64,000 bases of DNA from Octopus sinensis (lineage: Eukaryota): NCBI RefSeq assembly GCF_006345805.1, contig NC_042998.1:170190001-170254000 (forward strand). Direction: 5' to 3'. A program made the position numbers and the translations under genes. Positions 418-33,342 of the stretch are shown piece by piece (within the stretch, counting starts at the first letter, position 1; each line of letters begins with the position of its first letter). Under the pieces are notes generated by a model. That model was given only the letters and a program-made list of their open reading frames with translations, was not told the DNA's origin and searched no databases.

Positions 418-649
418 GCATATAAAAACTTTGGTTCTAGAGTTGCAATTGTGAAAAAGAAACTCGATGAACTGAAGTTGTCATTACCAGATCCAGCTAG
501 TCCTCTGCCTTCACCTACACCTGATGCTCCATCACCTAGTAGTACTCCACCAGCAGACGTAGATACACAACAAGATAACACAGAAGCAATTGATATGGAA
601 CTTTCTGATTCTGACAATGATGAAAGTGATGCAACTCGAAATATATTAG
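418..649 (+). CDS. RPRD2: RPRD2-like gene, first exon in window (end of coiled-coil/CREPT region and SP-rich linker)
   Basis: Polypyrimidine tract and TAG acceptor at 415-417. Translates AYKNFGSRVAIVKKKLDELKLSLPDPASPLPSPTPDAPSP...DMELSDSD, matching my recollection of human RPRD2 AYKTFANRVNNLKKKLDQLKSTLPDPEESPVPSPSMDAPSP...DMELSD. Donor AG|GTAACT at 650, phase 1. Confidence 0.92.
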
Positions 650-1035: not shown

Positions 1036-1053
1036 TTGTTGTCAATGAAACTG
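1036..1053 (+). CDS. RPRD2: RPRD2-like 18-nt microexon (V-V-V-N-E-T)
   Basis: U-rich acceptor ttgtttcatttttag, then TTGTTGTCAATGAAACTG, then consensus donor GTAAGT at 1054. Phase 1-1, frame-preserving, no stop. Confidence 0.7.
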
Positions 1054-4000
1054 GTAAGTAATTTTTTTATATATATCTTTTTGTTTTTTAGCATTTGTTT
1101 AAACTTAATCGTTAGCTTATTGTACTAAGAATTTGTTTATATTTTACTAAATTAAGTCCAACTTCCTCTGGTTAATAAATAAATTTTAAAAAATTACTTA
1201 CGTAAAAGTTTTATTCACATACATAAATGCACATGTACTTTCACACAAAATACACACTTAAAGATAAACTCCCTTAGTGGCTCTGAATTTCTTAACTACT
1301 TTGATATCACTTTTGGGTTGGGCTTACAATTTGCAAATCTGTTAATTTGTCACTTCATCCAGTTATGGCATGATTCATTTTTACTTTTACTAAATGTCAG
1401 TCTGGTTCCTTTATTGTGTTCATACAACCTCTCATATACATCTTCTGCATGAAGTTGCTTAAGACTGATATTTGTTTATAATATTTTGTTATTTAATTTG
1501 CTTACTTTTTTTTCCACTTCTGATTTTTGTCAACTTAATTGTATGTTTTAAATATAGGTTGTGAATTATTTGTCTTTTTAAACTTGTATTATGTTGTTGA
1601 TAATTTCAAATATATGTTGTAAGAGCCTATGTAGATACTGAAATAATACTTTTTTTTCTTTAAATAAAGTCTCCCTCCCAGTGACAATCTAATTTTTTGT
1701 TGAAATGAACAAAAAAACATTCATGTAAGGCTTGTTAGAATTTATCAAATTAAGAAATTATCTTCAGAAAGTTGAAATTACGTCTGTAAGCTGTAAACTT
1801 TTATTGTATTTTATGTTGTTACTGTTAGAATAAGGTGTTAAAAAAAATTTTTTTTCCATTGTTTTCTTGTCACTTGATCTTAGTGGGGCGCAGCCAATAC
1901 ACTCGCAAAAGCTGACCCTTTTCATAAATTTCATGCTTTAAACAAGCAAATACCTTATGAAAGTTGAAATTTACCTAGTCTTTTCAAATAAGCAAGTAAT
2001 ATCATCTAATATTTTGGTGGTTGGTGATTTATAAGTAACTAACAGTCAGGCAGATTTGAGAGTAAACATTGTGAAAAATTATTAAAAATATAATTCTCTT
2101 AAAAACTACCAAATTATCTATATAATAATTGTTTTTACCCAACACTCTTTTCACTACAAAGTTTCTCTCTCTCTCTCTCTCTTTCCCTCTCCCCCCCTCT
2201 CTCTCTCTCTCCAGAATATTTTGTTTGCCTGAAACATTTGTGACTATTCCAACTCGTGCCAGCATGAGAAAAGGAACCTTAAAATGACAGTAGAATGTGT
2301 GTTTAATTTCTATCTGAAATATAATCTTAATATAAGAAAATAAATATTAGGAAAGAAAATAAACATGCGTTAACAAATTGTTGAGCAGGGTATGTAGTGA
2401 CATTATAAATCTAGTTATAATTAATATAATGTGTGTGAGAGTGAGATTGCATGTATGTAATTATTCTTAAAACACATCTGTCTAGCTTCATGCTTATATT
2501 ATTTTCAATTTAACAGTGTATATTTCAATTTGTTTCTTTTACAAATATTTGTGATCATAATCTCATAAAAGTTGTCTAATCTGGTTTGTTAAATTTCTCA
2601 AAAAGAATTGGTAAGCCTTCTCGAAAACACATAGGATTAGTAAAGCTGTATTTATAAAGTATGATAGCAGATAAGATTGATGGTCTTTAATGGAATTGTG
2701 AAGACAGATATTTGAGTATTCCAAGATATTATGATTCAGTACTCAGGATATACTACATTTCAAAATTCTGTTCAGTGTAACACATAGCATAACTTTACCT
2801 GTGTTAGAATATAATTGGCATAAAAATAGAGGATTTCTTAAGTAGAGAATGCTTTGGTGAACATCTGGGGAAATATTTAGAATGCGTCATCTTGAAAAAT
2901 TACTATACTTTGGTTTGGATTCATTGTAAGCAATCTGTCCTAAGCCCTGAAAATTAGCCGATTATTTCATTGCATTTGTATTATTTATTCAACAAAGGGA
3001 TTCTGGTAATTATTTATGATCAAGTATAAGATTTTTGTATCTCATAATTTTCATTGTAAATTATTAAGTACTAAGTGGGATTATTTTAAGTTTTGTTGTT
3101 GACATCCATTGTCCACCTCTGTTGCTATCCACCACTCTCTTTCTCATCCCTACCTCTACCATCTCACATAAATCACTCCCTTACTCTCCTTGCCCACCAA
3201 TCTAGGTTCTTCTACCTTCACTCTCTGTTCTATTCACCTTGTTCAGTCATGTTGCCTTTAGCAAAATAGCAAGGCTTCTTCAGTCTTATTGGATACAAGG
3301 TAACTTCATCAGTGCTTGTGTCATGATAAATTGAAGTTTAGAGGACTTCTTAGGCTAATCAAAGACATGGTAACCTTTCTAGTGCTGGGGCCATGAAAAA
3401 AATGCCTCCAGTACACTTTGCATGTGGTTGGTGTTAGGAGAGGCATGCAGCCATAGAATCTAAGACAAAATTGAAATGCACAAGCAAGATGTCGACCCAT
3501 CCAGGAGAGCATTGATGGAAATAAGATCTCAGATCATCATGACCAGCATGATACCAGCATGGAAGGTGGGCGTAAAATGATGACAGTGACTGTTGTTATT
3601 ATTATTATTAAACCCTTTCAGTTTTGTTTAATTTTCCATTAAAATTATAGACGTCTTTGCTGACATAGTTAAAATATACATATAAAGCATATTGTTTCTG
3701 ATTTAAACATTTCACTCTTGTCAAAAAGATTGTTTGAGTTCTGGTTTGGCCATAGTTCAAGGATAGCTTCAACATGGCAGTTTTAGAACAATTCAGTTAC
3801 AAAATATTTCTGAATGTTGACTTCAAATATTAAGATAATGTTATTGTAACCAGCCTTTAAGTTTGTCTTGAATACTCAGAGCAATGTACTTGCATGTGTG
3901 TATGTGCATGCATGTGTGTGCGCGCACACATGTGTGTATTTTAACGCATTGTTAGTGAATATGGACTGTTGATAATATATAGTTTCATTTTAATTTTATA

Positions 4001-7000
4001 TGATATTTATTTTTATTGTAGCCTTTCAAGGTTTCTACTGCTAAACAATGGTAATCTCTATTATGCATACTGGAGATTAGAGATGTGGGTTTTGTCATGA
4101 GAGTAGCTTTTAAGAAGACTTATAAAGTAATTAAAAAGTACTAAGGAAAACAATATATTTAGTAAAATTTATCAAAATTTGTTGAAAATTTTTGAGGGTC
4201 TCTGAAAAGTAATAGGCTAACACATCTAAAAGAATGACGTTTGGTTTTAAAAAGAGGCTTTAAATTAAAAATGAAAATTTATCAATTTTTTACAGAAAGC
4301 TAACTACATCAAGTTTTTAATATATTTCTAAGTTTGTTGTGGCAATTAGGTTGAGTTTATTTTAATTCTATCACTGATTATTCAACTACAGTCATTTTCA
4401 ACATAAAAAGTGTCTTATACTTGCAATATTTTATTTTGAGTTAAAAGGAGATCAACCATCCTCAGATTTAAATATAAGAATTTACACATCCCTGCTATGA
4501 AATATCTATGGAAATATACAAAACATGTAGGTTATTCAAAAGAATAGTACAGAAGCTGCTACATCTGTTGCAGGATGTTATTTTGCATTAAAGGTACAGC
4601 ACAACTGAGCTAGAAAAATAGTTAGGTATTAAAAATATTGGCCAGTATGTCTTGATGTAATAACTGCATTGGTATAGACATGATGCATACAACTATTGAG
4701 TATTCAATGATAAAGTGGCAGAGAGTGACATGGGAAGAAGTGATGATATAAAAGCTCAGAATGTTGGCCTTCACAACCATGGTGACATTAGATTTTCAGC
4801 TATCATCAACATTTTATATTCAGGTTCCATGTTGACAAAGATTAGCCAGTTGGACAGTATACAACAATTCAGAGGATCACTTCTTACTCATCTGTCTCAC
4901 TTTCGGCATAGTTTCTATGGCTGGATGTCCTTCTTAATGCCAACCACTTTTCAGAGTGTACTGGGTGCTTTTCAAGGCACCAGAACTAATGACATTGACT
5001 TGTAACTTGTGAGAGTAAAGAGCCTTCATGACTGAAATGAAAATAGGTGTCAGCATTAGGCAAGGTGATGAGAGAGAGGATTGAAGTATATTGGGAAGAA
5101 CAGGGTATACACTTTAAAGTATGGAAGGGAAAGAAAACAAGGATTAGGGTTAGTGAGAATAAGAGAATGACAGAATATTTATGGAGATGGAAAACGGACA
5201 TTAAATGATGAAGATGATGATGATGAAGTCAATTGTAAGAGAAGTATTTGGACAGTTACAAACAGCTTTTTAGTTTGCATTTGTTGACTTGGAGATTTTT
5301 GACTCTATCCTTTGCTGTAAAAGTCCAAATTAATGGGTTGGGGTGGCATAGAAAAAGCAGTTCAGCTATGTAAAAGAAGTTTGATGACAAATCACAATAA
5401 TTTGCTGTGGAAAAAAATCATGTATAGTTATTGCTTTGAAGCATTGCTCTTGTGATAATTGTTTTCCGTGTAAATGTGTGAATGTTATCAACATCATTTA
5501 AATGTCTATATTTCCATACTCGCTTGCATAAATCAGGCAGAATTTTGTTGAGTCTGATTTTCTCCAGCCAGGTGCCCTGCCTGTTGCCAAACCTCATCTG
5601 TTTTAATGGAAAATTTGGAGGAAAGGACACCACTTACTTGGTGAATTCAGTAACACATGTACATGTGCATTCACACATATATACATGCATGTGTATGTAT
5701 GTATACACACACACACATATATATATATGATGGGCTTATTTCATCTACTGAAATCACTTACTAGGCTCTGGTTGGCTGGGACTATGGCAGAATACATTTG
5801 CTCGAAGTGACATACAGTAGAATTTAACCCAGAACAATGGTTCTGGGAAGCAAACTTCTTACTGCATGGCTAAGTCTGCCTATGCGACTAAATATCTGAA
5901 TATCTTTTTGAATGATTTGCTATATTTGTCTTCTTTTGTGCTTCAAATATGTGCCTCATCTGTGTTTGACATAGGAAAATAAAGTTGCTGCCCCCCCACG
6001 ACTAAATCCCCAAGTTATGGTTTTGTTCGTATCTCTCCCTCTTGTGAAAAAGTAATTGACTTAACAATATTTTAAAACTTTATAAGAAAACAACCCATAT
6101 TTTCAGGATACCTCATTCAGAGATGAATGTTTGCTTTAGAGTCATATCATGTTTGTTTATTCTATTTTATCTAAAATATTTTTATTTTGTCGAAAGTGTC
6201 ACACAATCTTTTCCTCCTCCTACTTGTTTGTTTAAGCATGTATTAGACACAAACTAAATTGCCAATGTTTATTATGATTATGATACGTTAGAAGCCTTTC
6301 AATGCTGATGTTAACAGAAAATAGACATTGTAGCATTAGATCTGTCGATTTAGCTCATTGAATTGAAGATAATCTCTTTGTAATGAGTATCTTATTTAGT
6401 GAATGCAGTTCAATTTATATCTATAAATATTCAATTCTTTTCACTGATTTAACTGTCTTAATGAACCATTTTGATCATTTTGATCCCCCTGTGATATCAG
6501 ATTCCATATTTACCATGTTTGTTGATATGTGCTTGAATTTAGGTTGGAGATTCTTGAGTCTTTATTTCAAATATAGAGTTCTATGTTCTTATCCACTAGG
6601 CTGTAGTCCCCATGGAATAGTTATGTCGATTTAAATTATATTTAGACATATTTTTGGTAATATCAGCTATATTAGGCTAAATTCAGTGCTATATTTACTG
6701 ATTATCTTCTCAAAACACTGTATGAACTGCTTTTTTTATTTTCTCTAGTTTCCACTGTTTCTTTCCCTATAATGGAAACATTATTTTCAGTATATTATTA
6801 CAGTTTTTATAACATATGCTTTTTATAGTATATGATGTTCTGTTGTAGCTGACTTCTCTTGTATTTTGAGCTTTCCACTGTTGTTTCTCTGCTATAAGTG
6901 CATGGGACATTGTATACTCTTTTAGTGGTTTCAATTTTTGAACAACGGCCATGCTAACATACTGTCTTGGTAGGTTTAGTCAATCAGATCAACCCCAGTG

Positions 7001-8127
7001 CTCACTTATTAAAGTCTGGTGACCTCCTTTTGCTGACCTGCTTAGTTATGGGGATGTAAGCAAACTAACACTGGTTGTTTAGTGTTGAGACAAAGGGTTG
7101 TGCACAAATGGACCCCCACCCCCAACTCACCACATGTGCAGTGATTTTCCACAGTTTCCGTTTACTAAATTCACTCATAAGGCATTGATTTATAGTGTTA
7201 TAGTAAAAGACATTTACCTAAAGTGCCACACTGAGGGACTCAACCTAGAACCATGTAGTTATGAGGTGAACTTTTTAACTACACAACCCTGTCTGCAGCC
7301 TTTTCTTGAATAAATTTAAATTTGATAAAACAACTATAGAGTGTTGTATTATATCTAAACACTGTTCTGATCTTATATTTGCTACATTTTGTTGTATGTT
7401 GTATATTCTCAGCCAGACCTTTATAGCATGGAAGAGTCACAATGGATTTAATTTTAGTTTCATCCATGCAAATAAATGCAAGTGATGATAATTGTAATAG
7501 TAAACTTCAGTTTGGTCTTCACAAATATCTGTTCCCAAAAAAACATAGCTGTGCTAAAACCACGATATGATCCCAATTGATTAAATACCAGAAAAATTGT
7601 TTCTTTTGATAGACACAGAAATAGTAACACCAGTAAATTATTTCTGGATATTATTTCAAAACTACAAAAGAAAACAAATAGTGAGTTGTCTTGAAAGATT
7701 TTTGGATTGTACCAATTCCTGAAGTATTATATTACCAATTAAAATGCTTCATGTTGTTTTTTGCTAGACTCTAACACTAAATTCTCTTGTCTTGATTGGT
7801 AATAACTCTGCACATTTAAAAATAATTTGTGTGATCTCCTTTAGAGTTTTGATGAATTTTCATGTTAAATTTTTCATGAATTAATGTGGTTTTCTGTCGG
7901 TGCTTATTCACTTCTCATATGAGTTAATTCACATACTTGGTAGTGTTTTGTTTAATGACAGAGATACTCACTGTCAAATTCAGAATGTAAATAAGTGACA
8001 ACAACATTTCTGCAAATGTACAAAATATGGTCCATGAATACACTGGACACTAACATTCAAAATCTACATATACAATACAGTGATCCCTCACTACTTTGCG
8101 GATTCATGATTTCGCGGATTTTTAAAA

Positions 8128-8538
8128 TCATCATCATCATCATCATCATCGTTTAGCGTCCGTTTTCCATGCTAGCATGGGTTGGACGGTTCTACTGGGG
8201 TCTGTGAAGCCAGAAGGCTTCATCAGGCCCAGTCAAATCTGGCAGTGTTTCTACGGCTGGATGCCCTTCCTAACGCCAACCACTCCGAGAGTGTAGTGGG
8301 TGCTTTTTACGTGCCACCCGCACAGGTGCCAGACAGAGCTGGCAAACGGCCACGAACGGATGGTGCTTTTTATGTGCCACCGGCACGAGGGCCAGGCGAG
8401 GCTGGCAACGGACACGAAACGGGGCGGTGCTGGCAACGGTCGCGAAACGGAAGGTTCTCTTACATGCCACCGGCACTGGTAACACATCTGCAATTTCCAT
8501 TGATCGATTTCAATTCTGATCCTCACTTGCCTCAACGG
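8128..8538 (-). mobile_element. RTE-LINE 3'-end-derived repeat (family A), young copy with (ATG)n tail
   Basis: (CAT)n tail, then gtttagcgtccgttttccatgctagcatgggttggacgg...ctggatgcccttcctaacgccaaccac and internal gtgccaccggcac repeats. Many copies occur across the window. Confidence 0.8.
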
Positions 8539-8680
8539 ATATACATAATTTATTTCCATACCAGCATGAGTTAGACAAGATATTTTGGGAGATTCATTTT
8601 TTTAATTGCCAGATGCCTTTCCTATGAACAACCCTTGTTTTTTCCATCAACTTTCTGTCCCTCTACCATACTTTCATATC

Positions 8681-8913
8681 TATTTCTTTACTACCCACAA
8701 GGGGCTAAACACAGAAGGGACAAACAAGGACAGACACACGGATTAAGTCGATTATATTGACACCAGAGCGTAACTGGTACTTATTTAATCGACCCCGAAA
8801 GGATGAAAGGCAAAGTTGACCTCGGCAGGATTTGAACCCAGAACGTAGCGGCAGACGAAATACCGCTAAGCATTTCGCCCGGCGTGCTAATGATTCTGCC
8901 AGCTCGCCGCCTT
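8681..8913 (-). mobile_element. SINE family B, full length, with a perfect 21-bp target-site duplication
   Basis: Head GGCGGCGAGCTGGCAGAA with B-box-like GGGTTCAAATCC on the minus strand. cctctaccatactttcatatc is repeated at 8660-8680 and 8914-8934. Confidence 0.9.
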
Positions 8914-9520
8914 CCTCTACCATACTTTCATATCCTTCAATATTATATTCCACTCAAAGCAGCAAACTGGCAGAATCATTGAGAGTTCAAACTCTGCAAA
9001 AGCTGACCCTGCCCTTCATCCTCCCGGGGCCGATAAATAAGCACGAGTTGAGAACTGAGGTTGATGTAATTGACTTTCTTCCTTCCTTGAATTTGCTGGC
9101 CTTGTGCCAAAATTGGAAAGCAAGATTATATCCCACTCAGTTGAGGGATGTCTTGTCTTGCAAGCATTTGGTGACCTCACTGGTGTAGTGCTATGCCGAA
9201 AAAAAAAACTCAAAACAAAGCAAAAAAAAAACCCACCTAGTATCCCCTGTAAAATGGCTGGTGCTAAGAAATGTCTCCCTCCAGCCATAGAAACCATGTC
9301 AAAGTCAACACTGGAGCCTGCGGTAGCCCTCTGGCTTGTCAGTTCCTATCAAACTGTCCAACCCAAGCCAACATGGAAAGAGGGACATTAAATGATGATT
9401 TTGTCAGCTTTCTACCTTGAATTGAAAATCTGTCCAAGTATTTCAAAACTGATGTATATATAGATATACATCACCTACATTATCTTTTCCTTGCATAAGC
9501 TGAGTAGGTCCTATTTATGT

Positions 9521-9522
<2 letters not shown>

Positions 9523-9577
<55 letters not shown>
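9523..9577. repeat. (TA)n microsatellite (others at ~27115-27160, 33307-33342, 34400-34463, 47971-48000)
   Basis: Seen directly. Confidence 0.95.
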
Positions 9578-9581
<4 letters not shown>

Positions 9582-9598
9582 ATCCAAATATATATATA

Positions 9599-10007
9599 CT
9601 AGCAGCTAAGCCTGGTTTCACCTGGTCGGTTTGGATGATGTAGCTGTAAAACCTGCTCTGTGAAAGCATTTGACTTGTTTGGGCATGCTTACATAAAAAA
9701 ACAATTTTAGAATGACTTTTTTGTCAAAATGCTAAAAATAACTACAAAAAACAACAACCAAGATTCAACCAAATCAAAAAATAAATCCAAATACTAAGTG
9801 AACAACGATGAACCATCCCACTTCCATTGCACGCGCACACATAACCCCTCCTTTACATACACACAGAGTTGAAATGCTGTTTGATTTATTTTTCAGCGTA
9901 CAATTTTCCTCATCCCACCACCAAGTATGACATCACCACTTCCTTCCTTATTCATCTATCATGCCTTCCTTTCTCATTCATAAACACAAGAGTATTATTA
10001 TAGTAGA
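9599..10007 (-). mobile_element. Non-autonomous Helitron
   Basis: Minus strand reads host A|TCTACTATAATAATA ... degenerate hairpin CCAGGTGAAACCAGG ... CTAG|T host: 5'-TC, 3'-CTAG, subterminal hairpin, A-T insertion site. Confidence 0.7.
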
Positions 10008-10179
10008 TTATCTTGGTAACCAGGGGAACTATGAAAAAAATACAAAGCCCAGCATCACCCCCAGATCATTCTATACATCTGTGTAATTTTTCGCGCAATT
10101 CCACCCAGCCGTTTGATCGTGAATCCCAAGACAAGAAAGAATTGCCCATGTCAAATTTATATACATAGATATATAATTT

Positions 10180-10985
10180 GCAGACATGACTGTGTGGCAC
10201 CTTAGGCAAGTCTCTTCTACTATAGCTTTGAGATCACCAAAGCCTTGTGAGTGAATTTGGTAGACAGAAACCGAAAAAATACCATTATATGTGTGTGTGC
10301 GTGCGCATGTGTATATATATATATATTTCTTTATTACCCACAAGGGGCTATCACACAGAGGGGACAAAGAAGGACAGAGAAACGGATTAAGTCGATTACA
10401 TCGACCCCAGTGCGTAACTGGTACTTATTTAATCGACCCCGAAAGGATGAAAGGCAATGTCGACTCCGGTGGGATTTGAACTCGGAACGTAACGCCAGAT
10501 GAAATACGGCTGTGCATTTCGCCCGGCGTGCTAACGTTTCTGCCAGCTTGCCGCCTTGGTGTATATATGTGTGTGCATGTGTATGTGTTTGCCCACCATC
10601 GCTTAACAACTGATGTTGGTGTGTTTATGCCCCCGTAACTTAGTTCAGCAAGAGACTGACAGAATAAGTACTAGGGGTTGATTTGTTTAACCCTTTAGTG
10701 TTCACATTATTCTGCCAAAATTAATGCTTTTTCATCTACATTGCCTTGAACTAATCAGGAATTATCTTGTAGCTTTGAGATTTTGATGAGGTAGCTATTA
10801 ATTTTTAAAACGATATTGTAGGGTTGGTGTGAGAGACCAGATCTGGCCATTTTGAACATAAAACAGGCAGAATACTTTTGATCGGATATGGCCGGTTTAA
10901 ATGCTAAAGGGTTAAATAAAACCCTTAAAGGTGGTGCTCCAGCATGGCTACAGTCCAATGACTGGGAGTGAAACGAGTAACAGAG
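10180..10985 (+). mobile_element. SINE family C carrying nested SINE B (10324-10557, minus) and a TTAA MITE (10691-10911)
   Basis: Head gcagacatgactgtgtgg...ccttaggcaagtcttctactatagc...gccttgtgagtgaatttggtagacagaaacc and tail ggtgctccagcatggctacagtc...gaaacgagtaacag. The interruptions match repeats found elsewhere in the window. Confidence 0.7.
10691..10911 (-). mobile_element. piggyBac-like TTAA MITE (221 bp)
   Basis: TTAA|CCCTTTAG...CTAAAGGG|TTAA. About 94% identical by my count (about 14 mismatches) to the reverse complement of 32247-32467. Confidence 0.85.
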
Positions 10986-11007
10986 TATCGAAGATTGAAA
11001 AGGTTAC

Positions 11008-11276
11008 CTGAGTAATTTTACAAGAGCTGGAATACCTCCAGATTTAAATATAGCCAGAAGTCCCTGTCTATGTTGTGAGAGGCTATGGAGAACTGCAGCT
11101 CCATAACGAGTGGTTTCAAAATCCTTTGTATTATTCATGGCTCGTACAAGAGCCGCAACCATTTGTGGAGAATTAAGGATAACATGCCGGCTAGCATCAT
11201 TTCTGGTTAAGTGGTGTACAATGACAGCGGCGCGAGCAACGACCACTTGGTCCTCATCGTTCAACAACTTAATCAG
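11008..11276 (-). CDS. CTNNB1: Isolated beta-catenin/armadillo-like exon (armadillo repeats 1-3 region), antisense in RPRD2 intron 2; functional status unknown
   Basis: Translates [89 protein letters not shown](S). Colinear without indels with beta-catenin about L156-G245. AG acceptor at 11278-11277, donor CAG|GTAACC (phase 2) at 11007. Confidence 0.9.
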
Positions 11277-12459
11277 CTATATGAACACCTAAAATTTTTC
11301 ATTAAATCCATTAAAATATTAATAATAAATATTATTTCCTAGTCTATGAACAACAAAACAAGAGCAAAATAGCAAAAAAGCATATACAGGGGTATTTGAA
11401 CTTAAGATGGGCTGGGATTTGTGCAATGGAGAGAGACGACGAATCACAGCTTTCTATTTTGTAATCTGGCCTGTGTAACAGTAACAATATTTTTAAAAAT
11501 CTAAAGTGTTATTGCTTAACAGTTGTGTTTGTTATTTATAGACTACTGTAATGGGTGAGTTGTTAACAGTACAGGGAGAGTTTTAAAAGTCCAAATACAC
11601 GTTAAATAAATACTGTAAATATGGTGTCCCTACTTTGCGGAAATTCAGTTATCGCAGCCGGTCTCGGAACAAATCTACTGCGATAAACAAGGGATCACTG
11701 TTCCATCAAACTATCGACAATGCTATATGCAAGTGAAAGAAGGAAGAAAAGAAAATCGTCAAAGAGTTGACTGTCTTTAAATAAAAGTCTTGGAGGAAAA
11801 TCCATAGAAATGAAGTTTTAAGAAGACTATTATCATGAAGACTTCAAGACCTGGTAAATGTACATAGAATGCATTTGGCTTGTCATGTTCTGCAACAACC
11901 AGATAATGAGTATGCAGAAACAAAATTAAGATGGACTCAAGTAAGATGAAAGAGAAGATAAAAAAAAACAACAAAAAAACTGAGGTCTCTTAACAGGCAC
12001 TGGGAAAACAATCAAGACAACAGAAGCAATGGAGGCTCTAGAGCATATGCTCTATATGCTGGTATGCAAGTGATGGATTAACTAACATCTTGTAGGCTGA
12101 GATTTTAGAACATATATCTTTGAGTTGGATTTTTCTGGATTACATTATGTTCTTCCTGAGATCCTTTCATGTCTTCTACTAGGATTAATTTCGGTGGCGG
12201 GGATTAGAGAAGTTGCGTTTTATATTTAAATCTGTCTAAATGCTATTGATATAACATCTGTATGTATGTATGTGTGTGTACACATGTACATATGTGCATA
12301 GATGTAGCTGGATGGTGAAATGTCCATGAAAACATGAGGAAATATTACCTTCAAAACAAGTGAGTGCTGGTGGTAGGAAGGGCATGTGGCCATAGAAAAT
12401 CTGTCACAACAAATCTGGTCCATGCAAGCATGGAAAATGGACATTTAAACGATGATATA

Positions 12460-12893
12460 CAGGGTGTCCCTCCAAAATTGACATCATTTCGCAGTCTAGT
12501 AATGTAGCCAATTCTCTCCCAAATGACCTCAAATTTTAACAAAATGTGTAAAAACTAAGTTTTGATCTGGCATGCCAGTGATAATGACAACGTACTGTTG
12601 AAATGACCACCAAGTTCACCCGACTTGACACCTTGTAATTTTTTTTCTATGGGGCTATGTTGAAGGATTGGTCTGTATCCCCCTCTTCCTATAAGCCTAG
12701 AGGAACTCAGCAGATAATCACTGAGGTGCTGGAGAATGTTACACAATAACATGCTACAACATGTTTGGCAGGAGCTGGACTACTTACTTGACATGTGTCA
12801 TGTCACAGATGGTGTGCATGATTTTATGTCTCGGACATGTAGTTGCTCAGATATTCACATTACAGATGATGCCAATTTTGGAGGTATACCCTG
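12460..12893 (+). mobile_element. Tc1/mariner-superfamily internal-deletion derivative (434 bp)
   Basis: TA|CAGGGTGTCCCTCCAAAATTGACATCAT and inverse GATGATGCCAATTTTGGAGGTATACCCTG|TA. Decayed transposase C-terminus (*PPSSPDLTPCNFFLWGY...LQHVWQELDYLLD) at about 12600-12800. Confidence 0.85.
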
Positions 12894-15170
12894 TATATGT
12901 AACTAAAAAAATTTGTTCCAGTGGAAGCCAGTGTTAATACTAGTCTGCATTGAGGTGTTTCTAATAGGTCAGCATCACTCTCTAAAACTGCTCATTAGTA
13001 TTTTGGTTAAAAATATTCTCCTGCGAGAGGAAATTCAAATTTTCCTTAATTATCATTGATTTTGTATTGCACTCACCCACATAACTAAATCTATTTATCA
13101 CAACTGTTCCATATCAAACAATTACTCAACTGTATTTAACATGCCCTTTTTATTTTGTGATTTCACAATTATTGTTCACCATGTTTCTGGCTTTCAAGTA
13201 AGAGAATAATTTGCTACTTAGTAAAACCTAAGTATGATTTACCTAGTATTTTTTTTCTCCTTGCTATAGTAATGTATCCTTCGTCAGTTTCAACAATGAA
13301 CATTCAGTTGTTCAATGAACTGATCTACTTTTTCATTTATACTAATATATGACTGAATATTCTGCAGAAAGTGTCTTCTTAGCCCATAGGCCAAATCAGT
13401 GTAAAAGAATATGAGACAAAGCTGTACTTTTGAATTACAAGCACAGTCCATCTAGTGGTCTTCTACATAGTTTCTGTTCTATCCAACTTCACTCTTGAGT
13501 TTATAGTAAAGATCTCTGCTCAATATGCCTTATATTGGGATTGAACCTGGGACGTCATATTGCAAAGATGAACTTTTATCTTCACTCTGCATTAAGAGTC
13601 TAATACTTCTTCAAATTCAGTTGTATAAATTTTTGAATTAAGAGATTTATTGATATAATCACTTCATCTGTAGATAAGAAAAGATATTTTCAGTTAAGTA
13701 CAGAGACACAAGTAGTCATATGACTTGTTCAGATCCTATACATTTTAAATTGTTCGCCTTTCATTATTGACTGGCTATGTTTTTCAGATTATTTTACATG
13801 CAAATCATATAAATATCAATAGTTTCTTCAGATATATTAGTGCTTTTTATCAAAATATCATGAACTAAATGAAGCTAGAATTTCAAAACTTATTTTCTCT
13901 CATAGAAAAATAATATTACATTTGACCCTAGTATTTGACTAGTACTTTATTTTATCAACCTCAGAATGATGAAAAGCAAAGTTCATTTCAGTAGGATTTA
14001 GTTACAAAATACAAACAGCTGAGTCTGACAGCCTGTCCATTTAGCTAACCACAATTATAAATGAAAATGAAATTAGATTTAAATAACCAGCTATTTTCAG
14101 AGTTTTAATACAAGTATAGTCTTATCTTGCTGAGAACTATTTAATGTTTCAAGTGTTGGTGCCACAAGAAAATGCACCCAGTATACTCTGGTTGGTGATA
14201 AGGATATCAAGCCATAGAAACCAAGCCAAATGACATGTACCAGTTAATGGGAGCAATAGTCCTAATAAGAAATGACTTGGACTGTAGCAAACCCTCCAGT
14301 GGATAATGAGCATATTATAACAACACTAATAGTGATGGTCATAGTGATTTTGTTGGAGAAAAGAGATTTCAAAATTCAAGCACCATTTAGCACATAATTC
14401 TTTAATAGGACCTTATGGAGGAGGTACCTGGTGACTCTGCTCCTACAACCATCCCAGGAATCATGGGTAAAGAAGATAGATGGATGAAGGATCTGAACAA
14501 ATTTTATGGCTGTACCTATCTCTCTACTTTTGTTGGCTTATGAATCATTCTTAGTCCACAATTGAAGTGACTATATCAGTAACCCAATGGATTTCCATAT
14601 TTGCTTGTAATAACAAAAGCTCCTTTATATTTGTTTTGTTTAGTTGCTAAATCAGGAAGGAGAGTAGTGCATATGACCCATTTTTTTAGGACCTCCAAGA
14701 CTGATGGTAGGGAGGGTGGAGGGTGGCAGGTATCCTCAAATTAGGAACTTGGCCCTCATACATAGGTTTAAGCACCCAACACTACATTGAATTCTTTGAC
14801 AAGATATTTTCCCATACACTGACCTGATCTACATACCTGTAAGATCAAATCTACCTTGTTGTAAGTCGGTATCATAGGACCCTACAACTTGTTATTGTAA
14901 ATAGCAGGAACATTGTATAATTGATGAACACTTTGCTTGCCATACTGATTTTTTTTTTTCTATGGATACAGCATTAGGAAAAATTTTGTTTAACCTGTCT
15001 TTGTCTAGGTACACTACATAGATGTAATGTTTTCTGTAGATTCTTGCTCCCAAAAGATTATCAGACTCACAATGGCAAACAAATAATGATTAATTATGAG
15101 AAGTATAGAGATAGTCTAATTTTGAATGATGAAATAAGTCATCTACTTGGAGTCAAAATTAGAAATATTA

Positions 15171-15500
15171 TCATCATCATTATTATCATCGTTTAATGTC
15201 CACCTTCCATGTTGGCATGGATTGGATAGTTTGACAGGTGCTGACCAGGTAGAAGACTACCTCAGGCATCTGTGCCTGTTTTGGCATAGTTTTTTATGGT
15301 TGGATGCTTTTCCTAACACCAACCACCCCACAGGGTGGACTGAGTGCTTTTTATGTGGCACCAGCACAGGCAAGGTCAGTTTTGGCATGGTTTTTACAGC
15401 TGGATGCCCTTCCATATGCCAACCATTTCTCAATGTGGATTGGATGCTTTTCACATGGCACCCTCAACAGCAGGGTCACCAAGTAACTTGCAAGACAAGG
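15171..15500 (-). mobile_element. RTE 3'-end repeat (family A)
   Basis: (CAT)n tail plus gtttaatgtccaccttccatgttggcatggg...ggatgcttttcctaacaccaaccac, similar to 8128-8538. Confidence 0.75.
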
Positions 15501-17287
15501 AATTTTTGAGAGGGAAGGGAGCATTATATTTAAATTTAATAGCTGCTGGTTTTGCAAAAATGAGAAAGTTATTATTACTATAACTTAGTAATTATTCACG
15601 TTAATTCCCACTTTGCACTTCTGAAAGCTCTGCATCTGGGTCAACATCTGCAAATTAATAGTTTGTCTGGTATTTCAGCCTCCTGTACTCTGGGGTGTTA
15701 TTTTTTCTTTATATTTAATTTCCACTAATAAGCAAAATGTTAAAATACCTTGCATGCTCTTTTCCATGTACTTCCTATTAATTCAGTGTAAAACTCTTTG
15801 TATGTGCATACATATACATGCATATGCAAGTGTTCATTCATTGCAGAAAGTGTACCATAAAGATTATTTAATTATTGAAATATTAAGTTATATTGATCAG
15901 TATTATAGCTGTCCTTCAAATATAAAAATCTTTTGTGATACAAATAATACTGTATAATCCCTACTTTTTTCTTTGGTCAGTAAGTGTTATTTCCTATTTG
16001 TGTCTATCTAGAAATCAAAGGAAATGACTACTATTCCCTTCAAACTTTGCTTTTGTGATTTGGATATCAAATGTTTTGAAACTTACCTAGTTTCCATTAC
16101 ATTTCAGACAAATTAAGCACTGAGTTGCTGAAGCAGAAATATCATTAAAGCAAATATTCTGCTCAATACCACAGATTTGCTTGTCAGTTGCTTGGCTGTA
16201 ACCACTTGAGCATGTACCTTAGCGACTGACATGTGCATCTCTGATCACAAGTAACAGTAGTTGGGGAGCATCATATCCATGTTTTGAGAGGGATTCTTTA
16301 GGGTTTGAATAAATGTAACAAAAACAATGTTTGAAGGAAATATTAGCCATTTTTCATACTTTCTGAGGCTAAGCAAATAGAAAATAACAGTTGCTACCCA
16401 AGGACAAAAACCTTTGTTACACAGTGTAATTATGTGCAATTAATCACCATAGATTTCCTAGCAGTAATTATTAAGCTTAGGCTGGTGACAACTACTATAT
16501 TTTCTGTGCATGCATTTCTTGTAACAATAGCAGCTAAGTAGAAGGATCAATCTATTAGGCTTTGTGAAAAGCACCTGATAGATAAGTAGCAAAGATGTTC
16601 TAATCCTAATAAGGAATTTGGATATCACATTATAAAACATCATGACATACACTGATGTCTGTAGTGGCTGTGTATGTGATAGAAGAAATTTTAAAGGAGT
16701 AAGTCTTAACCTTTATGTGTAAATTCATTTGCATCACGGACATGCGAGTCTTGCTCCTTCAAAATTTCTTTTACTACATATACAGCCTCTCCATACATCA
16801 GTGTATGACACAATGTTTTATAATGTGATATTAAAATTTCTTTTATATAAACCAGACAATCATTTAGTCACCAACTAATAAAATGGGTTTAGGAATCAGA
16901 TTTACATCATCCTAACCTGGAAAAGAGGCAGACAAATGGTCATGACCACTAGGTCCTCTAACATAGAGTAATACTTTGTGGATTCAGATTGAAAATGAGG
17001 ATAAGTGAAACTACAACATGAGTGTAGTAGTTGAAAGATGCTATTGTGAGTTGAAGTACAGCTTCAGGTTAAATAAATGCTGTACATTATTTCATTTTAT
17101 CTCTATTTTCTTGATTCAAACTCACTCAAAGAGATGAAGGATAGAGACAAATTCTTCTTAACCTTAAACGAATGCTGATGTAAAAACATAAAATAATGAA
17201 TAAGGATTGTTTCTATGATATGTAGGTTACTTCATAGTCTCTACTTCATCTAACAGTGCACCAACTTCCAACACACACTCCAAACTG

Positions 17288-17432
17288 TTTTCAGTTTCCA
17301 TCTAACTGATCCATTCACAAGGCTTCGGTTGGCCTAGGATTATAGTAGAAGACACTTGGCCAGGATGTCACACTGAGATCAAATTCAAAATCATGTGACT
17401 GGGGAGCAGACTTCTTAACCACACAGCCATGT
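17288..17432 (-). mobile_element. SINE family C 5' half
   Basis: ttttcagtttccatctaac...tatagtagaagacacttggcc...ttaaccacacagccatgt is the reverse complement of the head at 10180. Related copies at about 5740-5880, 34480-34610, 40660-40800 and 43030-43190. Confidence 0.75.
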
Positions 17433-19689
17433 CTGCACCACAATTGTAATATGATATAAAATATTGAAAAGATGAAAATGGTATTCTTTAATTCAGTAGG
17501 CTTTGTTTTGTTAAAATTGCTGCAGGGGTTTAAATTATAAATTTATGTCTAATACTGATAATTACATACCACATGTTGACAATTTCACTTTCGAAATGTT
17601 TTATTTTATTATGCTTTTACATGTTAACCACATACACTCGTAGAAACTGTATAAGTCAGCAAGAGAGTCTCTACATCAGTGATTCTCCATGTTTTGTTGC
17701 TCAACACTCTCATCTTTATACTTTACAAAATAATAGTAACAATAAATAGGATCAAATAAGTGTACACATTGTGGATGATTTTTTTCTTCTTTACCTGTTG
17801 ATCTTTATATGTTGTCATGTCACTTTCCAAGGTAGGTTGAATATTGGTAAGTTCATTACATGTAGGTGTTTTCATATATATTTACAAGATATCAGTTTCT
17901 GGTCATTGTCTTATCTCAGCTGAATCTGTGTTCCAGTAGTCTCTGTGACTCCCTTGAGAAAAAGCATTCCAAAACATGCCTTTATTATGATCAACTTTAT
18001 GATAACTTCACTCCTGTTCAGAATCCATAAATCTCCGATATCACTTAGATTGTTGGTGTGTACAGATGATGCTGAAATATCACTTTAATTATTTTTGCTA
18101 ATTCCAAGCCCTCTTTCTCTAAAAATAGAAGGAAGAAAAATAAAAATCCAAAGAAGTTCAATCATTGAAGCAAAAAATAAACACATTTTGCAAACAGGAA
18201 GTCTTTTAACTGTAAATTCTTTCTAAAGTGTAGTTAAATTTTGCGGCCCACATGGAAGAGTGCATAATACCTGTTCTGGGGTCACAAACAACAGCACAAT
18301 CTGAATTATAGTTGTGTGTACTATGTGAATTGTAATTATCATGACTCGACAACCGTTGCAGTTACTTATAGTACAAGACTTTAAGAGTTAAAACTACCAA
18401 GTTCAAAACTGTAAATGGGGAGACTTGAGGCTCTGTACTGAACAGAGCCAGAAGTCTCTTCTTTTACAGTTTCATAATCTATTACTCTGTTTAGCTAACA
18501 GTTGTACTACTACTATGCTCAACCCTTTCTCAGCCAAGTATGTGAAAGAAAATATTACCAGCAGTTTTATTTCTTTTCAAAGATAGAGATGTTTATTTTG
18601 TTCTGTCACTGATAACAGAAAGTTTTATTTATATTCTATTCACAACCAAGGTAGAGTGTCCTGTTGATATTAACCATTTTCTTGTGCATTACAATACTTT
18701 CTAGAGAACACTTTTACCCAGGTTAAGACACACTCCACTTACTAGAAATAACAATCAAATCCCTTTCAAATCGCATCTTTCTGTCTTAGAGAATGGTGTT
18801 AGATAATGTGGTCACGGGTGTCTTTCACATAAGAAAAAGATGGATGGTCATGGCTGGAATCCTTTGATCATAAGAGGTCTGTTTGGTCAGGGCTAACTGG
18901 AATTCAACAACAGCCTGCATGTGGTTGCTCATAGCAGCCAAGGTTCACTCAGCAAATGGCATACACATAGTCATTTACTCACCTAACTGTTTACTTCATT
19001 AAACATAACTTGGATCAGTTTACTTAACTATTCCTCCCACTTTCCTTTTCTTAGGCATTTATAAACTCAAAATAACATTAAAACTTAAGGAAGTTAGAAA
19101 GCTACAGAGTAGTGAAATATGGGAGTGCTCTGCTTTGCTGAGAGTTTGCTCTGGCATTCCACCACTATGATATTTCTTGTCTTCATCTTCCCAATTGCTA
19201 CTATGTATGTATCTCTCCCCCTTTATAATGTGGGGTAGCAGTGTATCTTATCTATAGCAACACACCTATGCTTGTCCCTCTGTCATACTTTAAGCTTTCA
19301 ACACCTAATATAAAACCACCTCCTCCTTCCTAATACTCCACCACCACGACTCATCGTGGCGGGGGGGGGGGGGGGTAGCTTTTGTCTTTCCTATTCTTTT
19401 CTGTCTTACAACTTAGCTGGCAATCTCACTAGCACCCAATACACACTCTAAGGTGGTTGGTGTTAAATAGGGCATCAAACCATAGAAAACCTACCAAAGC
19501 AGACACAAGAGCTTGGCACAGCTGTGTGGCTTACCAGATCTTCGGTTGGCCTAGGATTATAGTAGAAGACACTTGGCCAGGATGTCACACTGAGATCAAA
19601 TTCAAAACCATGTGACTGGGGAGCAGACTTCTTAACCACACAGCCATGTTTTTATTATTTTTTTCTCAAAGAAAAGTCTTTATTCTCAA

Positions 19690-20210
19690 CTGGAAAGGAT
19701 GAATGGATGCAAGTTCTGACGTTTCTTACTGAAGTAAAGAATCTTCTGCAAAATCTCGACTTGGCATTGCTGGGGAAGAACATAATTGTTTCTGATCTTA
19801 CTCAGTAAGAGAGTAAATTCATTCTGTGGTATTGAAATATAAGACTATAAATTGTAAGATACTGCTTCACCTGTCTAGTAAATCCATTCTTAAATGATGT
19901 GTCAGTGCAAGATGTCTGATTCTTTAGCATCTGGTTTCATAATCAACTACTGTAGAAATGGAAATCCCAGTTTGTAATCAAGTTCTGGAAACAAATTCCA
20001 GAAATAATATATTCTAAACTACAGAAAACTAGTGCGAAATCCATCTCAGTTGTCAGCGCAACATGCTACTTTGAATCACTATCTGTAATTAAGTTTGTGA
20101 AGTTGAAGTATCATGCAAATCCTTAATAACCACTTGGCAGAACTAATTTGTTCAACCATGACAGCATATCACCTGGATTTTCAATGATTTACAGCCAAGA
20201 TAGAGACCCA
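19690..20210 (+). mobile_element. Decayed hAT (Charlie/SPIN/GTF2IRD2-like) transposase fragment
   Basis: Reads DEWMQVLTFLTEVKNLLQNLDLALLGKNIIVSDL (compare W..DLAFLTD...LN.LNL.LQGK) and SATCYFESLSVIKFVKLKY (compare C-terminal dimerisation motif STY.CE..FS.MK..KSK). Multiple stops. Confidence 0.6.
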
Positions 20211-20619
20211 TAAGAGCTCTTACTTGCAGTAAATAATCTGATAATTGTAGCATTGTCTGTTTGTCATAAAAATTTTACAAGAGTGTAATTAGTGGTATCT
20301 GATTGAAATATCTCTAAGTTTATTAGTTTTTTTTGTTTTTTTTAAATACATTTCCCTCATGTTTTCAGATATTTAAAGACAAATATCAATAAGAAATTAA
20401 TTTTTTGTTTTAGTTTATTTACTGAAATGCAAATTACTATTTTTCTAAGATGTTCTCATAGTTTATTATTGTATTAAAGCCACTCAATCACCAGTCAAAA
20501 TTTTTAAAGCATTTGGTATATATGTATACTTGGTAATGACTGAAACTAAATCACATTATCAATTACATTTACGAGTGAATATTATTATTGTGTACATGTA
20601 TATCTGAAACCAAGTGAAA

Positions 20620-21050
20620 TCAGGGTCGTGGCTGGCACTGGTGTCACATAACTGGTACCCATGCTGGTGGCATGTAAAAAGCACCTTTTGAGTGTTGGGC
20701 CTCACGGACACAAAGTAGTTGTTTCTGGTGGCAGGTAGAAAGCTCCTTTCGAGTGTTGGGCTTCATGGAGGCAATGACTGAGACTTTTGGCATTATGTTG
20801 TACTTGAGAAGAAGACCCATCAAGCCAAATAAAATTGCAGTCATGGCAGATACTGGTGTCATGCTAATGGCACCTGTACTGGTGGCACATAAAAGCACCC
20901 ATTACTCTCTTGGGGTGGTTAGCATTAGGAAGGACATCCAGTTGTAGAAACCATGCCAAATCAGACTGGAGTCTGGTGCAGCTTCCCAGCCTTGATCAAA
21001 CCATCCAACCTATGCCAGCATGGACAACGGACATTAAATGATGATGATGA
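20620..21050 (+). mobile_element. RTE 3' end (family A) including the last coding codons
   Basis: atgactgagacttttggcattatgttgtacttgagaagaagaccc resembles an RTE C-terminus and runs into the family-A body and (ATG)n tail. This suggests family A is an RTE 3' UTR. Confidence 0.7.
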
Positions 21051-21319
21051 AGAATATAAACTTGTATGTAAATATTGTTCATATCTTGTAACTCAAACAT
21101 CTGTAGTTTATCACATGTGGCTCTTACGAGCAAGTTTGTTCTACCCGATACTAGCCTTTGCATTTGAGTGTGAGTGTGCACATGAACATTTACATGTGTA
21201 TGTAATGTTGGTGTTTTTATTGTAGTTTCTCAACCTATACTGCACACATGCTAACTGTAATCATTGATGGATTGTCACTTTCCAATAACTAATGATAATA
21301 ATTTATATGTATGCAAGTC

Positions 21320-21673
21320 AGAAAGGAGCATTCGTAATCTTTGTAGGTCCTCTCAGAGTAGTGGAATTGATGTTCAGTTTGAGCTTCCTGTAAACTGATG
21401 CCTGGTGGGAGGACATTGGTAGACAAGAGAGGAATTCTAAGGGTTGCACCTTAGAAAGGAATGATTGGGAAAAGTGTCTGTTGTGTGGTCTGAAAGGTAA
21501 AGGCAATGAGTTTGGGCAGCAGGTGTGCCAAAGAGGTGATGATAAGCAGCTTAAGTTCAGAAGTGTGGAAGTCATTGTAGTTGCAGTAAAACTAGCTGAG
21601 AGAAGAAATAGTCAGACTTGTGAGATAGTAATTGTAACATTCTAGTGGATTTTTGCCAATTAGCTAAACTCAC

Positions 21674-21761
<88 letters not shown>

Positions 21762-25559: not shown

Positions 25560-25722
25560 TCTGTCTGTCTGTCTATCTCTCTATCTATCTTTCTCTATCT
25601 CCCCCCTCTCTCTCTATCTATCTCCCTCTCTATCTACCTCCTTCTCTGTCTTTATCTCTCTATCTATCTATCTCTCTATCTATCATTCTTTCTATCTATC
25701 TATCTATCTATCTATTTGTCTG
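25560..25722. repeat. Compound (TCTG)/(TC)/(TCTA)n microsatellite
   Basis: Seen directly; it explains spurious ORFs 25445..25771 and 25552..26034. Confidence 0.9.

Positions 25723-27112: not shown

Positions 27113-27164
<52 letters not shown>

Positions 27165-33302: not shown

Positions 33303-33342
<40 letters not shown>

What the first reader, a model, noticed from the sequence alone, without database searches (positions are those of the whole stretch)
11008..11276. Orphan, intact beta-catenin exon antisense inside an RPRD2 intron
89 open codons plus 2 nt align without indels to beta-catenin about L156-G245. The exon ends in a phase-2 donor at what I recall as the position of the human CTNNB1 exon 5/6 intron, so it is genomic DNA rather than a processed retrocopy. 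By eye I found neither the preceding coding segment (NYQDDADLATRAIPE) nor the following one (SPVESVLFYAITTLH) in the window. Possible explanations: a captured fragment, a nested gene whose other exons are too diverged to see, or a gene interleaved with RPRD2 whose other exons lie outside the window.
Basis: partly seen in the sequence, partly recalled or inferred. Interest (0 to 1): 0.85.

Follow-up and report, generated by a model that had tools for sequence, protein, structure and literature searches.

The report
Lone beta-catenin exon in octopus RPRD2 intron
A single open coding piece of a beta-catenin-like gene lies backwards inside an intron of the octopus RPRD2 gene with no other beta-catenin exon nearby; it is most likely a stray copied gene fragment, but the way it has changed hints that octopus has, or had, a second, diverged beta-catenin gene.

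Summary
Window 11008-11276 (minus strand) is an open 89-codon + 2-nt segment that matches beta-catenin residues 156-244 without gaps (E about 1e-41 to 1e-44). It ends in AG|gtaacc at the ancestral phase-2 intron position. It lies antisense in a 38.3-kb intron of RPRD2 in Octopus (vulgaris group).

No other beta-catenin-like sequence is in the 64 kb, by tblastn, profile HMM and motif scans. In the O. vulgaris annotation, no gene model other than RPRD2 lies in the 162-kb RPRD2 range. The complete Argonauta RPRD2 locus lacks the segment.

The piece is not a canonical beta-catenin. It has 19 of 89 changes, 9 of them in a stretch almost invariant from insects to vertebrates. The changes are conservative: the segment fits a family profile better than all 600 neutral-decay simulations. 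So it diverged under protein-level selection.

Its 5' end is 13 codons shorter than the same exon in three other invertebrate loci, and the acceptor there is weak.

Best reading (about 0.55): a DNA-level partial copy of an already diverged beta-catenin-family gene, unused at this site. Main rival (about 0.2): one exon of an unannotated, very long-intron paralogue interleaved with RPRD2. This is an ordinary kind of object, of modest interest.

The parts
11008..11276 (-). Open beta-catenin-like coding segment: 89 codons + 2 nt, covering part of armadillo repeat 1, all of repeat 2 and the start of repeat 3, equivalent to human residues 156-245
11002..11007 (-). Splice donor gtaacc directly after ...CTC AG; phase 2; at the ancestral beta-catenin intron position
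   Evidence: same position in L001, L002 and L006 and in vertebrate exon-5 ORFs
11277..11290 (-). Putative acceptor region aggtgttcatatag. The AG at 11278-11277 is part of an in-frame TAG stop (11279-11277), and a second AG lies at 11290-11289. The pyrimidine tract is weak (9 of 16 at positions -20 to -5). Protein homology stops here, 13 codons short of the exon start in other invertebrates
10917..12334 (.). Block that contains the exon and has no other copy in the window; bounded by interspersed repeats on both sides
10685..10916 (.). Interspersed (SINE-like) repeat about 90 nt downstream of the donor; 94% identical to 32242-32473
418..649 (+). RPRD2 coding exon (AYKNFGSRVAIVKKKLDELK...), with an alternative donor near 687 used by the 1212-aa isoform
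1036..1053 (+). RPRD2 18-nt micro-exon (VVVNET), skipped in one annotated isoform
1054..39324 (+). RPRD2 intron (38.3 kb) that holds the beta-catenin segment in antisense; the orthologous Argonauta intron is 6.3 kb
39325..39432 (+). RPRD2 coding exon
43797..46096 (+). RPRD2 last coding exon (768 codons plus stop)

Best explanation
This is a solitary gene fragment. One exon-equivalent of a beta-catenin-family gene was copied as genomic DNA, not through mRNA, into what is now a 38-kb intron of RPRD2, on the opposite strand.

The copy kept the source gene's 3' splice donor. It probably lost the first 13 codons of the exon at the breakpoint.

The source was not a standard beta-catenin. The sequence had already diverged under selection for an armadillo fold, so the source was a diverged octopus paralogue or, less likely, an unusually diverged octopus canonical gene.

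At this site the fragment most likely does nothing. Its frame is still open because the copy is young.

Shown: its identity, boundaries, solitude, host gene, lack of annotation, absence from Argonauta, and non-neutral substitution pattern. Inferred: that a source gene exists elsewhere, how the copy was made, and that it is not expressed.
For: 1. It is the only beta-catenin-like segment in 64 kb, by tblastn at E <= 100, by an unfiltered profile HMM over all 3489 six-frame ORFs of at least 12 aa, and by motif scans for the neighbouring coding segments, which stay at shuffle level.
2. In O. vulgaris assembly GCA_951406725.2 the only genes called across the 161.9-kb RPRD2 range plus 10 kb on each side are RPRD2 and a Fringe/CHGN-like gene. 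That annotation combined Iso-Seq, RNA-seq, protein alignments and ab initio prediction, and its median intron is 2.5 kb (PMC10700109).
3. The complete Argonauta hians RPRD2 locus (63 kb, no N) has no such sequence. The same two-gene neighbourhood, with no Arm-domain gene, is annotated in Argonauta and cuttlefish.
4. It came from DNA: homology ends at AG|gt at a conserved phase-2 intron.
5. The 5' end is 13 codons short of the exon start in L001, L002 and L006, and the acceptor is poor.
6. It is not canonical. It has 19 of 89 differences from the nearest known sequence, 9 of them within [22 protein letters not shown], which is nearly invariant across the arthropod, vertebrate and unnamed invertebrate-like sequences retrieved. 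No hit in the searches of the two protein collections (5.8 billion clusters; 1.84 billion representatives) exceeds 79% identity.
7. It is not neutral decay. Mean BLOSUM62 of the replacements is +0.47, against -0.4 +/- 0.35 in simulations (P about 0.01). The family-profile score is 149.6 bits, against 126.7 +/- 5.7 (maximum 142.3) in 600 stop-free neutral simulations. By my reading of the list, every replacement keeps its hydrophobic or polar class except C213Y. Several replacements (I174, T179, R180, V187, S220) match residues in a plakoglobin-like vertebrate ORF that I identified by eye.
Against: No source gene was found. The octopus genome could not be searched, and the protein search tool appears to list only targets up to about 1.75 times the query length. 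Full-length octopus beta-catenins were therefore never visible.

An open frame with both splice dinucleotides is also what a real exon looks like. Absence from one annotation does not prove absence of expression. Argonauta may have lost the segment rather than Octopus having gained it. No transposon ends or target-site duplications were seen around the unique block, so the copying mechanism is unknown.
Confidence: 0.55

Rival explanations
1. It is a working exon of a real, unannotated, diverged beta-catenin paralogue. That gene's other exons lie outside the window (next exon more than 11 kb away, previous exon more than 53 kb away), interleaved antisense with RPRD2.
For: The frame is open, AG and GT are in place, and the substitution pattern shows protein-level constraint. 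Octopus genes can be very long: RPRD2 itself spans 162 kb.
Against: No gene model lies on the minus strand anywhere in the 162-kb RPRD2 range plus 10 kb on each side, in an annotation built from Iso-Seq, RNA-seq, protein alignment and ab initio prediction. The median octopus intron is 2.5 kb, so two consecutive introns of more than 11 kb and more than 53 kb would be unusual. The acceptor is weak, has an upstream AG, and makes the exon 13 codons shorter than in other invertebrates. Nothing comparable is present in the whole Argonauta locus, and no Arm gene is annotated in the cuttlefish locus.
Confidence: 0.2
2. It is a relic of the canonical octopus CTNNB1 that has been drifting neutrally since it was copied.
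For: It is solitary, unannotated, truncated at the 5' end and absent from Argonauta. Staying free of stops is only mildly improbable (P about 0.35-0.43).
Against: The replacements are far more conservative than neutral drift gives: none of 600 simulations reaches its family-profile score, and the BLOSUM test gives P about 0.01. There are no indels after at least 24 nucleotide changes. The changes are clustered, leaving unchanged runs of 21, 16 and 13 residues (P about 0.05 for the longest).
Confidence: 0.07
3. It is a transposon-carried gene fragment (transduplication of the Pack-MULE or Helitron type), possibly present in many copies in the genome.
For: The intron is full of interspersed repeats. 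A MITE-like element with 33-nt inverted ends lies 1.2 kb away (12455-12898), and a mariner-like transposase ORF lies in the same intron.
Against: No inverted or direct repeats bracket the exon block. The 1.4-kb block around it is unique in the window. No transposon protein ORF is adjacent.
Confidence: 0.1
4. It is an assembly chimera or foreign DNA, for example from a parasite or prey, joined into the octopus scaffold.
For: None directly. Reads could not be inspected.
Against: Octopus interspersed repeats with other copies in the same window lie within about 90 nt on one side and 1.1 kb on the other. Base composition is continuous with the flanks. The residues that distinguish it from vertebrate sequences match the invertebrate-like sequences found (I157, the [16 protein letters not shown] stretch, HRQGLL).
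Confidence: 0.03

Closest known systems
Partial (fragmentary) unprocessed gene duplicate, i.e. a pseudo-exon lodged in an intron of an unrelated gene
   Same: It is a single exon-equivalent with an ancestral splice boundary. It was copied as genomic DNA, has no promoter or neighbouring exons, is unannotated, and is lineage-restricted.
   Different: It has no disabling mutation. It is much more diverged from every canonical sequence found than a young copy of a canonical gene should be, and that divergence bears the mark of selection.
Canonical beta-catenin / Armadillo (CTNNB1, arm), exon covering armadillo repeats 1-2 (human exon 5)
   Same: It aligns without gaps to residues 156-244, has the same phase-2 donor position, and keeps [22 protein letters not shown] and [21 protein letters not shown].
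   Different: It has 19 of 89 substitutions, 9 of them in the otherwise nearly invariant helix [22 protein letters not shown]. It starts at L156, not Q143 (invertebrates) or about V166 (vertebrates). The other 11 or so coding exons are absent.
Diverged beta-catenin paralogues in other lineages (vertebrate plakoglobin/JUP; the two 'catenin beta-1-like' genes of the mite Panonychus citri seen; planarian and nematode paralogues, from general knowledge)
   Same: The degree and style of divergence are similar. Several replacements (I174, T179, R180, V187, S220) match residues in a plakoglobin-like vertebrate ORF.
   Different: Those are complete, expressed genes. Here only one exon is visible, and no octopus paralogue has been demonstrated.
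Nested antisense genes inside introns
   Same: It is a coding sequence on the opposite strand inside a long host intron.
   Different: A nested gene is complete within the intron. Here the 38-kb intron holds only one exon-equivalent.

Membership tests
beta-catenin / Armadillo family (as a gene) | Sequence homology to the armadillo repeat core | tested here: met
   E = 8e-42 against PDB beta-catenin and 1.4e-44 against the family HMM, but only for residues 156-244
beta-catenin / Armadillo family (as a gene) | Full set of 12 armadillo repeats | tested here: not met
   No other repeat-coding segment in the 64 kb. No gene model in the 162-kb host range. Beyond that range, not testable
beta-catenin / Armadillo family (as a gene) | N-terminal GSK3/CK1 degron and alpha-catenin-binding segment (through residue about 149) | tested here: not met
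   Homology starts at L156 with a stop codon directly upstream. Motif scan for LINYQDDADLATRAIPE stays at shuffle level
beta-catenin / Armadillo family (as a gene) | Canonical near-invariant residues of repeat 1 helix 3 ([22 protein letters not shown]) | tested here: not met
   9 of 22 positions replaced, all conservatively
Unprocessed partial duplicate (gene fragment / pseudo-exon) | Retains an ancestral exon-intron boundary | tested here: met
   AG|gt at the same phase-2 position as in L001, L002, L006 and vertebrate exon 5
Unprocessed partial duplicate (gene fragment / pseudo-exon) | Rest of the gene missing at the locus | tested here: met
   window; annotation of the 182-kb locus
Unprocessed partial duplicate (gene fragment / pseudo-exon) | A source gene exists elsewhere in the genome, with similarity extending into the flanking introns | not testable with these tools
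   Octopus genome DNA is not retrievable. The protein search appears limited by target length
Unprocessed partial duplicate (gene fragment / pseudo-exon) | Disabling mutations or neutral substitution pattern | tested here: not met
   Frame is open and there are no indels. The substitution pattern is non-neutral. This is compatible with a young copy of a diverged functional source
Processed retrocopy | Homology runs across former intron positions; poly-A tail; target-site duplication | tested here: not met
   Homology stops at the intron position on the 3' side, with no trace of the next exon. No poly-A or direct repeats
Transposon-mediated transduplication | Fragment bracketed by terminal inverted repeats or element ends, with target-site duplication | tested here: inconclusive
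   No bracketing repeats found within 8000-14500. The block is unique in the window. Genome-wide copy number unknown
Nested intronic gene | Complete transcription unit within the host intron | tested here: not met
   Only one exon-equivalent in the 38.3-kb intron
RPRD2 (host gene) | Identity to an annotated RPRD2 with CID and CREPT domains, and conserved synteny | tested here: met
   768 aligned residues at 99.6% identity to an O. vulgaris protein that UniRef names RPRD2 (Pfam CID, CREPT). Orthologues in Argonauta (82%) and cuttlefish (62%), each with the same Fringe/CHGN-like neighbour

The most novel reading that the evidence does not exclude
Octopus carries a previously unrecognised second beta-catenin gene: a diverged paralogue starting near residue 156, so lacking the degron and the alpha-catenin-binding region. 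Its exons would be scattered over more than 100 kb and interleaved antisense with RPRD2, and this would be one of them. A weaker form of the same reading is that such a paralogue exists elsewhere and this is a fresh copy of one of its exons.
Probability: 0.2. Interest if true: 0.55.

Novelty: new member of a known kind. Interest (0 to 1): 0.28.

Why it matters
As a stray gene fragment it matters little. Large, repeat-rich genomes hold many such pieces, and this one mainly serves as a caution for annotation, as an open, splice-flanked decoy exon inside RPRD2.

The useful by-product is indirect. The fragment's substitutions are too conservative for decay of a canonical beta-catenin. That points to a diverged beta-catenin-family gene in the octopus lineage that nobody seems to have described; three full-text literature searches found nothing relevant to beta-catenin copy number in cephalopods. 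Beta-catenin duplicates in other animals have split adhesion from Wnt signalling, so a cephalopod paralogue would interest developmental biologists. One whole-genome search would settle it.

Tried and rejected
- **Other beta-catenin exons in the window.** tblastn with word size 2 and E <= 100, an unfiltered profile HMM on all six-frame ORFs, and BLOSUM motif scans for the missing 13 codons and the next exon found nothing above noise.
- **Exact-protein look-ups.** Look-ups of the exon ORF, the RPRD2 ORF and the mariner ORF found nothing on record. The P0121 look-up also failed. P0370 worked, but its range is too long for DNA to be returned.
- **Looking for an octopus protein that holds this exon or for the canonical octopus beta-catenin.** The 90-aa query gave at most 79% identity. 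The 316-aa canonical composite named no cephalopod among the 120 hits listed. I then noticed that listed targets never exceed about 1.75 times the query length (158, 552 and 1199 aa). These negatives therefore say nothing about full-length proteins. The search of 1.84 billion representatives gave no closer relative either, but at 50% clustering an octopus paralogue could be hidden inside a cluster.
- **Finding the parent by nucleotide similarity.** Third-codon-position identity to L001, L002 and L006 is 22-36%, i.e. saturated, so none of them is the source.
- **Orthologous empty site in Argonauta.** Introns are not alignable apart from one block (3689-4106), so no precise empty site could be drawn.
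- **Processed retrocopy.** Rejected.
- **Transposon capture.** No bracketing repeats and no adjacent transposon ORFs.
- **Pfam.** The exon alone gives only weak Arm matches, and the two RPRD2 ORFs tested from the window give none.
- **Literature.** Searches on beta-catenin paralogues in cephalopods and on RPRD2 in octopus found nothing relevant.
- **RNA genes.** Rfam and tRNA scans of the window were empty.

Full report
**What is there.**
On the minus strand, window 11276-11008 is an uninterrupted reading frame of 89 codons plus two bases. It translates to [89 protein letters not shown].

Against all PDB sequences the best matches are beta-catenins (E = 8e-42), aligned end to end without a gap; plakoglobin is next. 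A tblastn with human CTNNB1 places it at residues 156-244. A profile HMM built from 13 full-length family members found here plus the human probe gives E = 1.4e-44.

The segment is followed by gtaacc, so the last two bases (AG) are the start of a split codon. It is preceded by ...aggtgttcatatag.

**The boundaries.**
The 3' boundary is ancestral. Three unrelated invertebrate genomic loci fetched here (L001, L002, L006) have an intron at the same codon and phase...AAA/CTN CTN AG|gt. Vertebrate CTNNB1 and plakoglobin exon-5 ORFs also stop being homologous at ...KMLG. Nothing resembling the next coding segment follows. The piece therefore derives from genomic DNA, not from a spliced mRNA.

The 5' boundary is different. 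In L001, L002, L006 and many other exon-sized ORFs, the same exon begins 13 codons earlier, at QDDADLATRAIPE. In vertebrates it begins about nine codons later. In the window, homology starts abruptly at L156.

The AG in front of L156 is the end of an in-frame TAG. Only 9 of the 16 bases at -20 to -5 are pyrimidines, against 12-13 of 16 for the three RPRD2 acceptors read in this window. Another AG lies 13-14 nt upstream, and using it would read straight into that stop. No trace of the missing 13 codons exists anywhere in the window. I read the 5' end as more probably a truncation point than a genuine acceptor. I could not see the cephalopod CTNNB1 gene structure, so an octopus-specific intron at this position is not excluded.

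**Surroundings.**
The 773-aa ORF at 43775-46093 (+) aligns over 768 residues to an O. vulgaris protein at 99.6% identity, with 1 mismatch and 2 gaps in the poly-Glu run. The search tool lists it as 100%. NCBI names the protein 'Hypothetical predicted protein [Octopus vulgaris]' and UniRef names it RPRD2. It carries Pfam CID and CREPT. Orthologues exist in Argonauta hians (82%) and Acanthosepion pharaonis (62%). The window is therefore from the Octopus vulgaris group.

RPRD2 exons in the window are 418-649, an 18-nt micro-exon at 1036-1053, 39325-39432 and 43797-46096. The beta-catenin piece lies antisense in the 38.3-kb intron 1054-39324.

The 1.4 kb around it (10917-12334) has no other copy in the window. 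It is bounded by interspersed repeats: 10685-10916 is 94% identical to 32242-32473, and 12335-12453 is about 76% identical to 42807-42932. No inverted or direct repeats bracket it, and no transposon protein ORF is adjacent.

**Is it alone?**
Within the window, yes.
- tblastn at E <= 100 gives only this hit.
- The profile HMM, run with all filters off on 3489 six-frame ORFs, gives this ORF at 1.4e-44 and the next at 6.8.
- Motif scans stay at shuffle level.

Beyond the window, a look-up of an O. vulgaris RPRD2 isoform located the gene in assembly GCA_951406725.2. Its range is 161.9 kb. The only genes called in that range plus 10 kb on each side are RPRD2 and a minus-strand Fringe/CHGN-like gene upstream. 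That annotation combined Iso-Seq and RNA-seq transcripts, protein alignments and two ab initio predictors, and reports a median intron of 2,467 bp (PMC10700109).

The same two-gene neighbourhood, without any Arm-domain gene, is annotated in Argonauta and in cuttlefish. The complete Argonauta locus (63 kb, no gaps) contains no beta-catenin-like sequence by tblastn or profile search. Its orthologous intron is 6.3 kb.

**It is not a canonical beta-catenin, and it did not decay neutrally.**
The nearest sequence found is only 79% identical. These searches covered 5.8 billion clusters, listing only length-limited targets, and 1.84 billion representatives.

Of the 19 differences from the nearest sequence, nine fall in [22 protein letters not shown]. 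That stretch is almost invariant across the insect, crustacean, vertebrate and unnamed invertebrate-like sequences retrieved; the window has [22 protein letters not shown].

By my reading of the list, every replacement keeps its hydrophobic or polar class except C213Y. Several replacements (I174, T179, R180, V187, S220) match residues in a plakoglobin-like vertebrate ORF, which I identified by eye.

I simulated neutral substitution from a parsimonious canonical ancestor until 19 residues differed.
- 35-43% of runs stay free of stops.
- The mean BLOSUM62 score of replacements is -0.4 +/- 0.35, against +0.47 observed (P about 0.01).
- An unchanged run of at least 21 residues occurs in about 5% of runs.
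- Scored against the family profile, the window segment gets 149.6 bits and the canonical ancestor 174.3. Six hundred stop-free neutral simulations get 126.7 +/- 5.7, with a maximum of 142.3.
- There are also no indels after at least 24 nucleotide changes.

Caveat: the ancestor is assumed to be the nearest canonical sequence, P0001, because the octopus gene was not available. Within that caveat, the divergence took place while the sequence was being selected as part of an armadillo-fold protein.

**Interpretation.**
A lone exon cannot be selected for protein fold, so a diverged beta-catenin-family gene must exist or have existed in this lineage. There are two options. Either this locus is that gene, or this is a copy of one of its exons.

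Against the first option:
- no model in a 182-kb annotated span;
- two flanking introns that would be more than 11 kb and more than 53 kb, in a genome with 2.5-kb median introns;
- the weak, shifted acceptor;
- absence of anything comparable in Argonauta.

I therefore favour a young DNA-level partial duplicate lodged in the RPRD2 intron and unused there (about 0.55). The alternatives are:
- the interleaved unannotated paralogue, about 0.2;
- transposon-mediated capture as a sub-mechanism, about 0.1;
- a neutral relic of the canonical gene, about 0.07;
- an assembly artefact, about 0.03.

**Limits.**
- The octopus genome itself could not be searched.
Full-length octopus beta-catenins, canonical or not, were therefore never visible.
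- Expression could not be tested.
- Gain in Octopus cannot be told apart from loss in Argonauta.

**Verdict.**
This is a real, correctly described feature of an ordinary kind: a solitary gene fragment inside an intron. The one notable point is that its conservative divergence implies an undescribed diverged beta-catenin relative in octopus. A single whole-genome search would confirm or dismiss that.

Noticed in passing
window 33306-34154 (-): 282-aa ORF with Pfam Transposase_1 (E = 1.7e-24) and a weak HTH_32 match: a mariner/Tc1-like transposase. It runs into a TA microsatellite at its 3' end (33307-33342), and another (TA)n lies at 34400-34464.
   Followed up: partly
window 12455-12898: MITE-like element of 444 bp with 33-nt terminal inverted repeats (91% complementary), 1.2 kb from the beta-catenin piece.
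   Followed up: no
window 10319-10557, 8676-8913, 52336-52510; and 10685-10916, 32242-32473: Two interspersed repeat families with copies 88-94% identical within the window (SINE-like). One family also hits the Argonauta locus at about 75% identity.
   Followed up: partly
window 1036-1053 (+) and 649/687 (+): RPRD2 has an 18-nt micro-exon (VVVNET) and an alternative donor 39 nt downstream (adding GNLASKLLPFNTF). Together these account for the three annotated O. vulgaris isoforms of 1193, 1199 and 1212 aa.
   Followed up: yes
window about 45.6-45.7 kb (+), poly-Glu run in the last RPRD2 exon: The window differs from the annotated O. vulgaris protein by one mismatch and a two-residue length difference in the poly-Glu tract. 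The window therefore comes from another haplotype or assembly, or from a very close species such as O. sinensis.
   Followed up: partly
window about 63180-64000 (+): Translated sequence (ISAYAPQ...GDFNGHVERE) that, from my memory of such domains, looks like the apurinic-type endonuclease of a LINE retrotransposon. It runs off the end of the window. Seen only as a chance tblastn row and an ORF.
   Followed up: no
window 8299-8418: 63-nt tandem repeat, 1.9 copies, inside a GC-richer repeat-derived block.
   Followed up: no
window 3689-4106 vs L003 45261-45673: The only non-repeat intronic block alignable between the Octopus and Argonauta RPRD2 introns (66% identity over about 430 nt). It may be a conserved intronic element.
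   Followed up: no
P0250 (313 aa, Logan contig, unknown animal): A diverged beta-catenin-like protein that lacks the N-terminal DSGxxS degron and shares AAVL..LSQHRQG with the window piece. It is only 68.5% identical, so it is not the source. It is an example of a degron-less paralogue in some invertebrate.
   Followed up: no
tool behaviour: the search for homologous proteins never listed a target longer than about 1.75 times the query length. Negative results for short queries therefore cannot exclude longer multi-exon proteins.
   Followed up: partly
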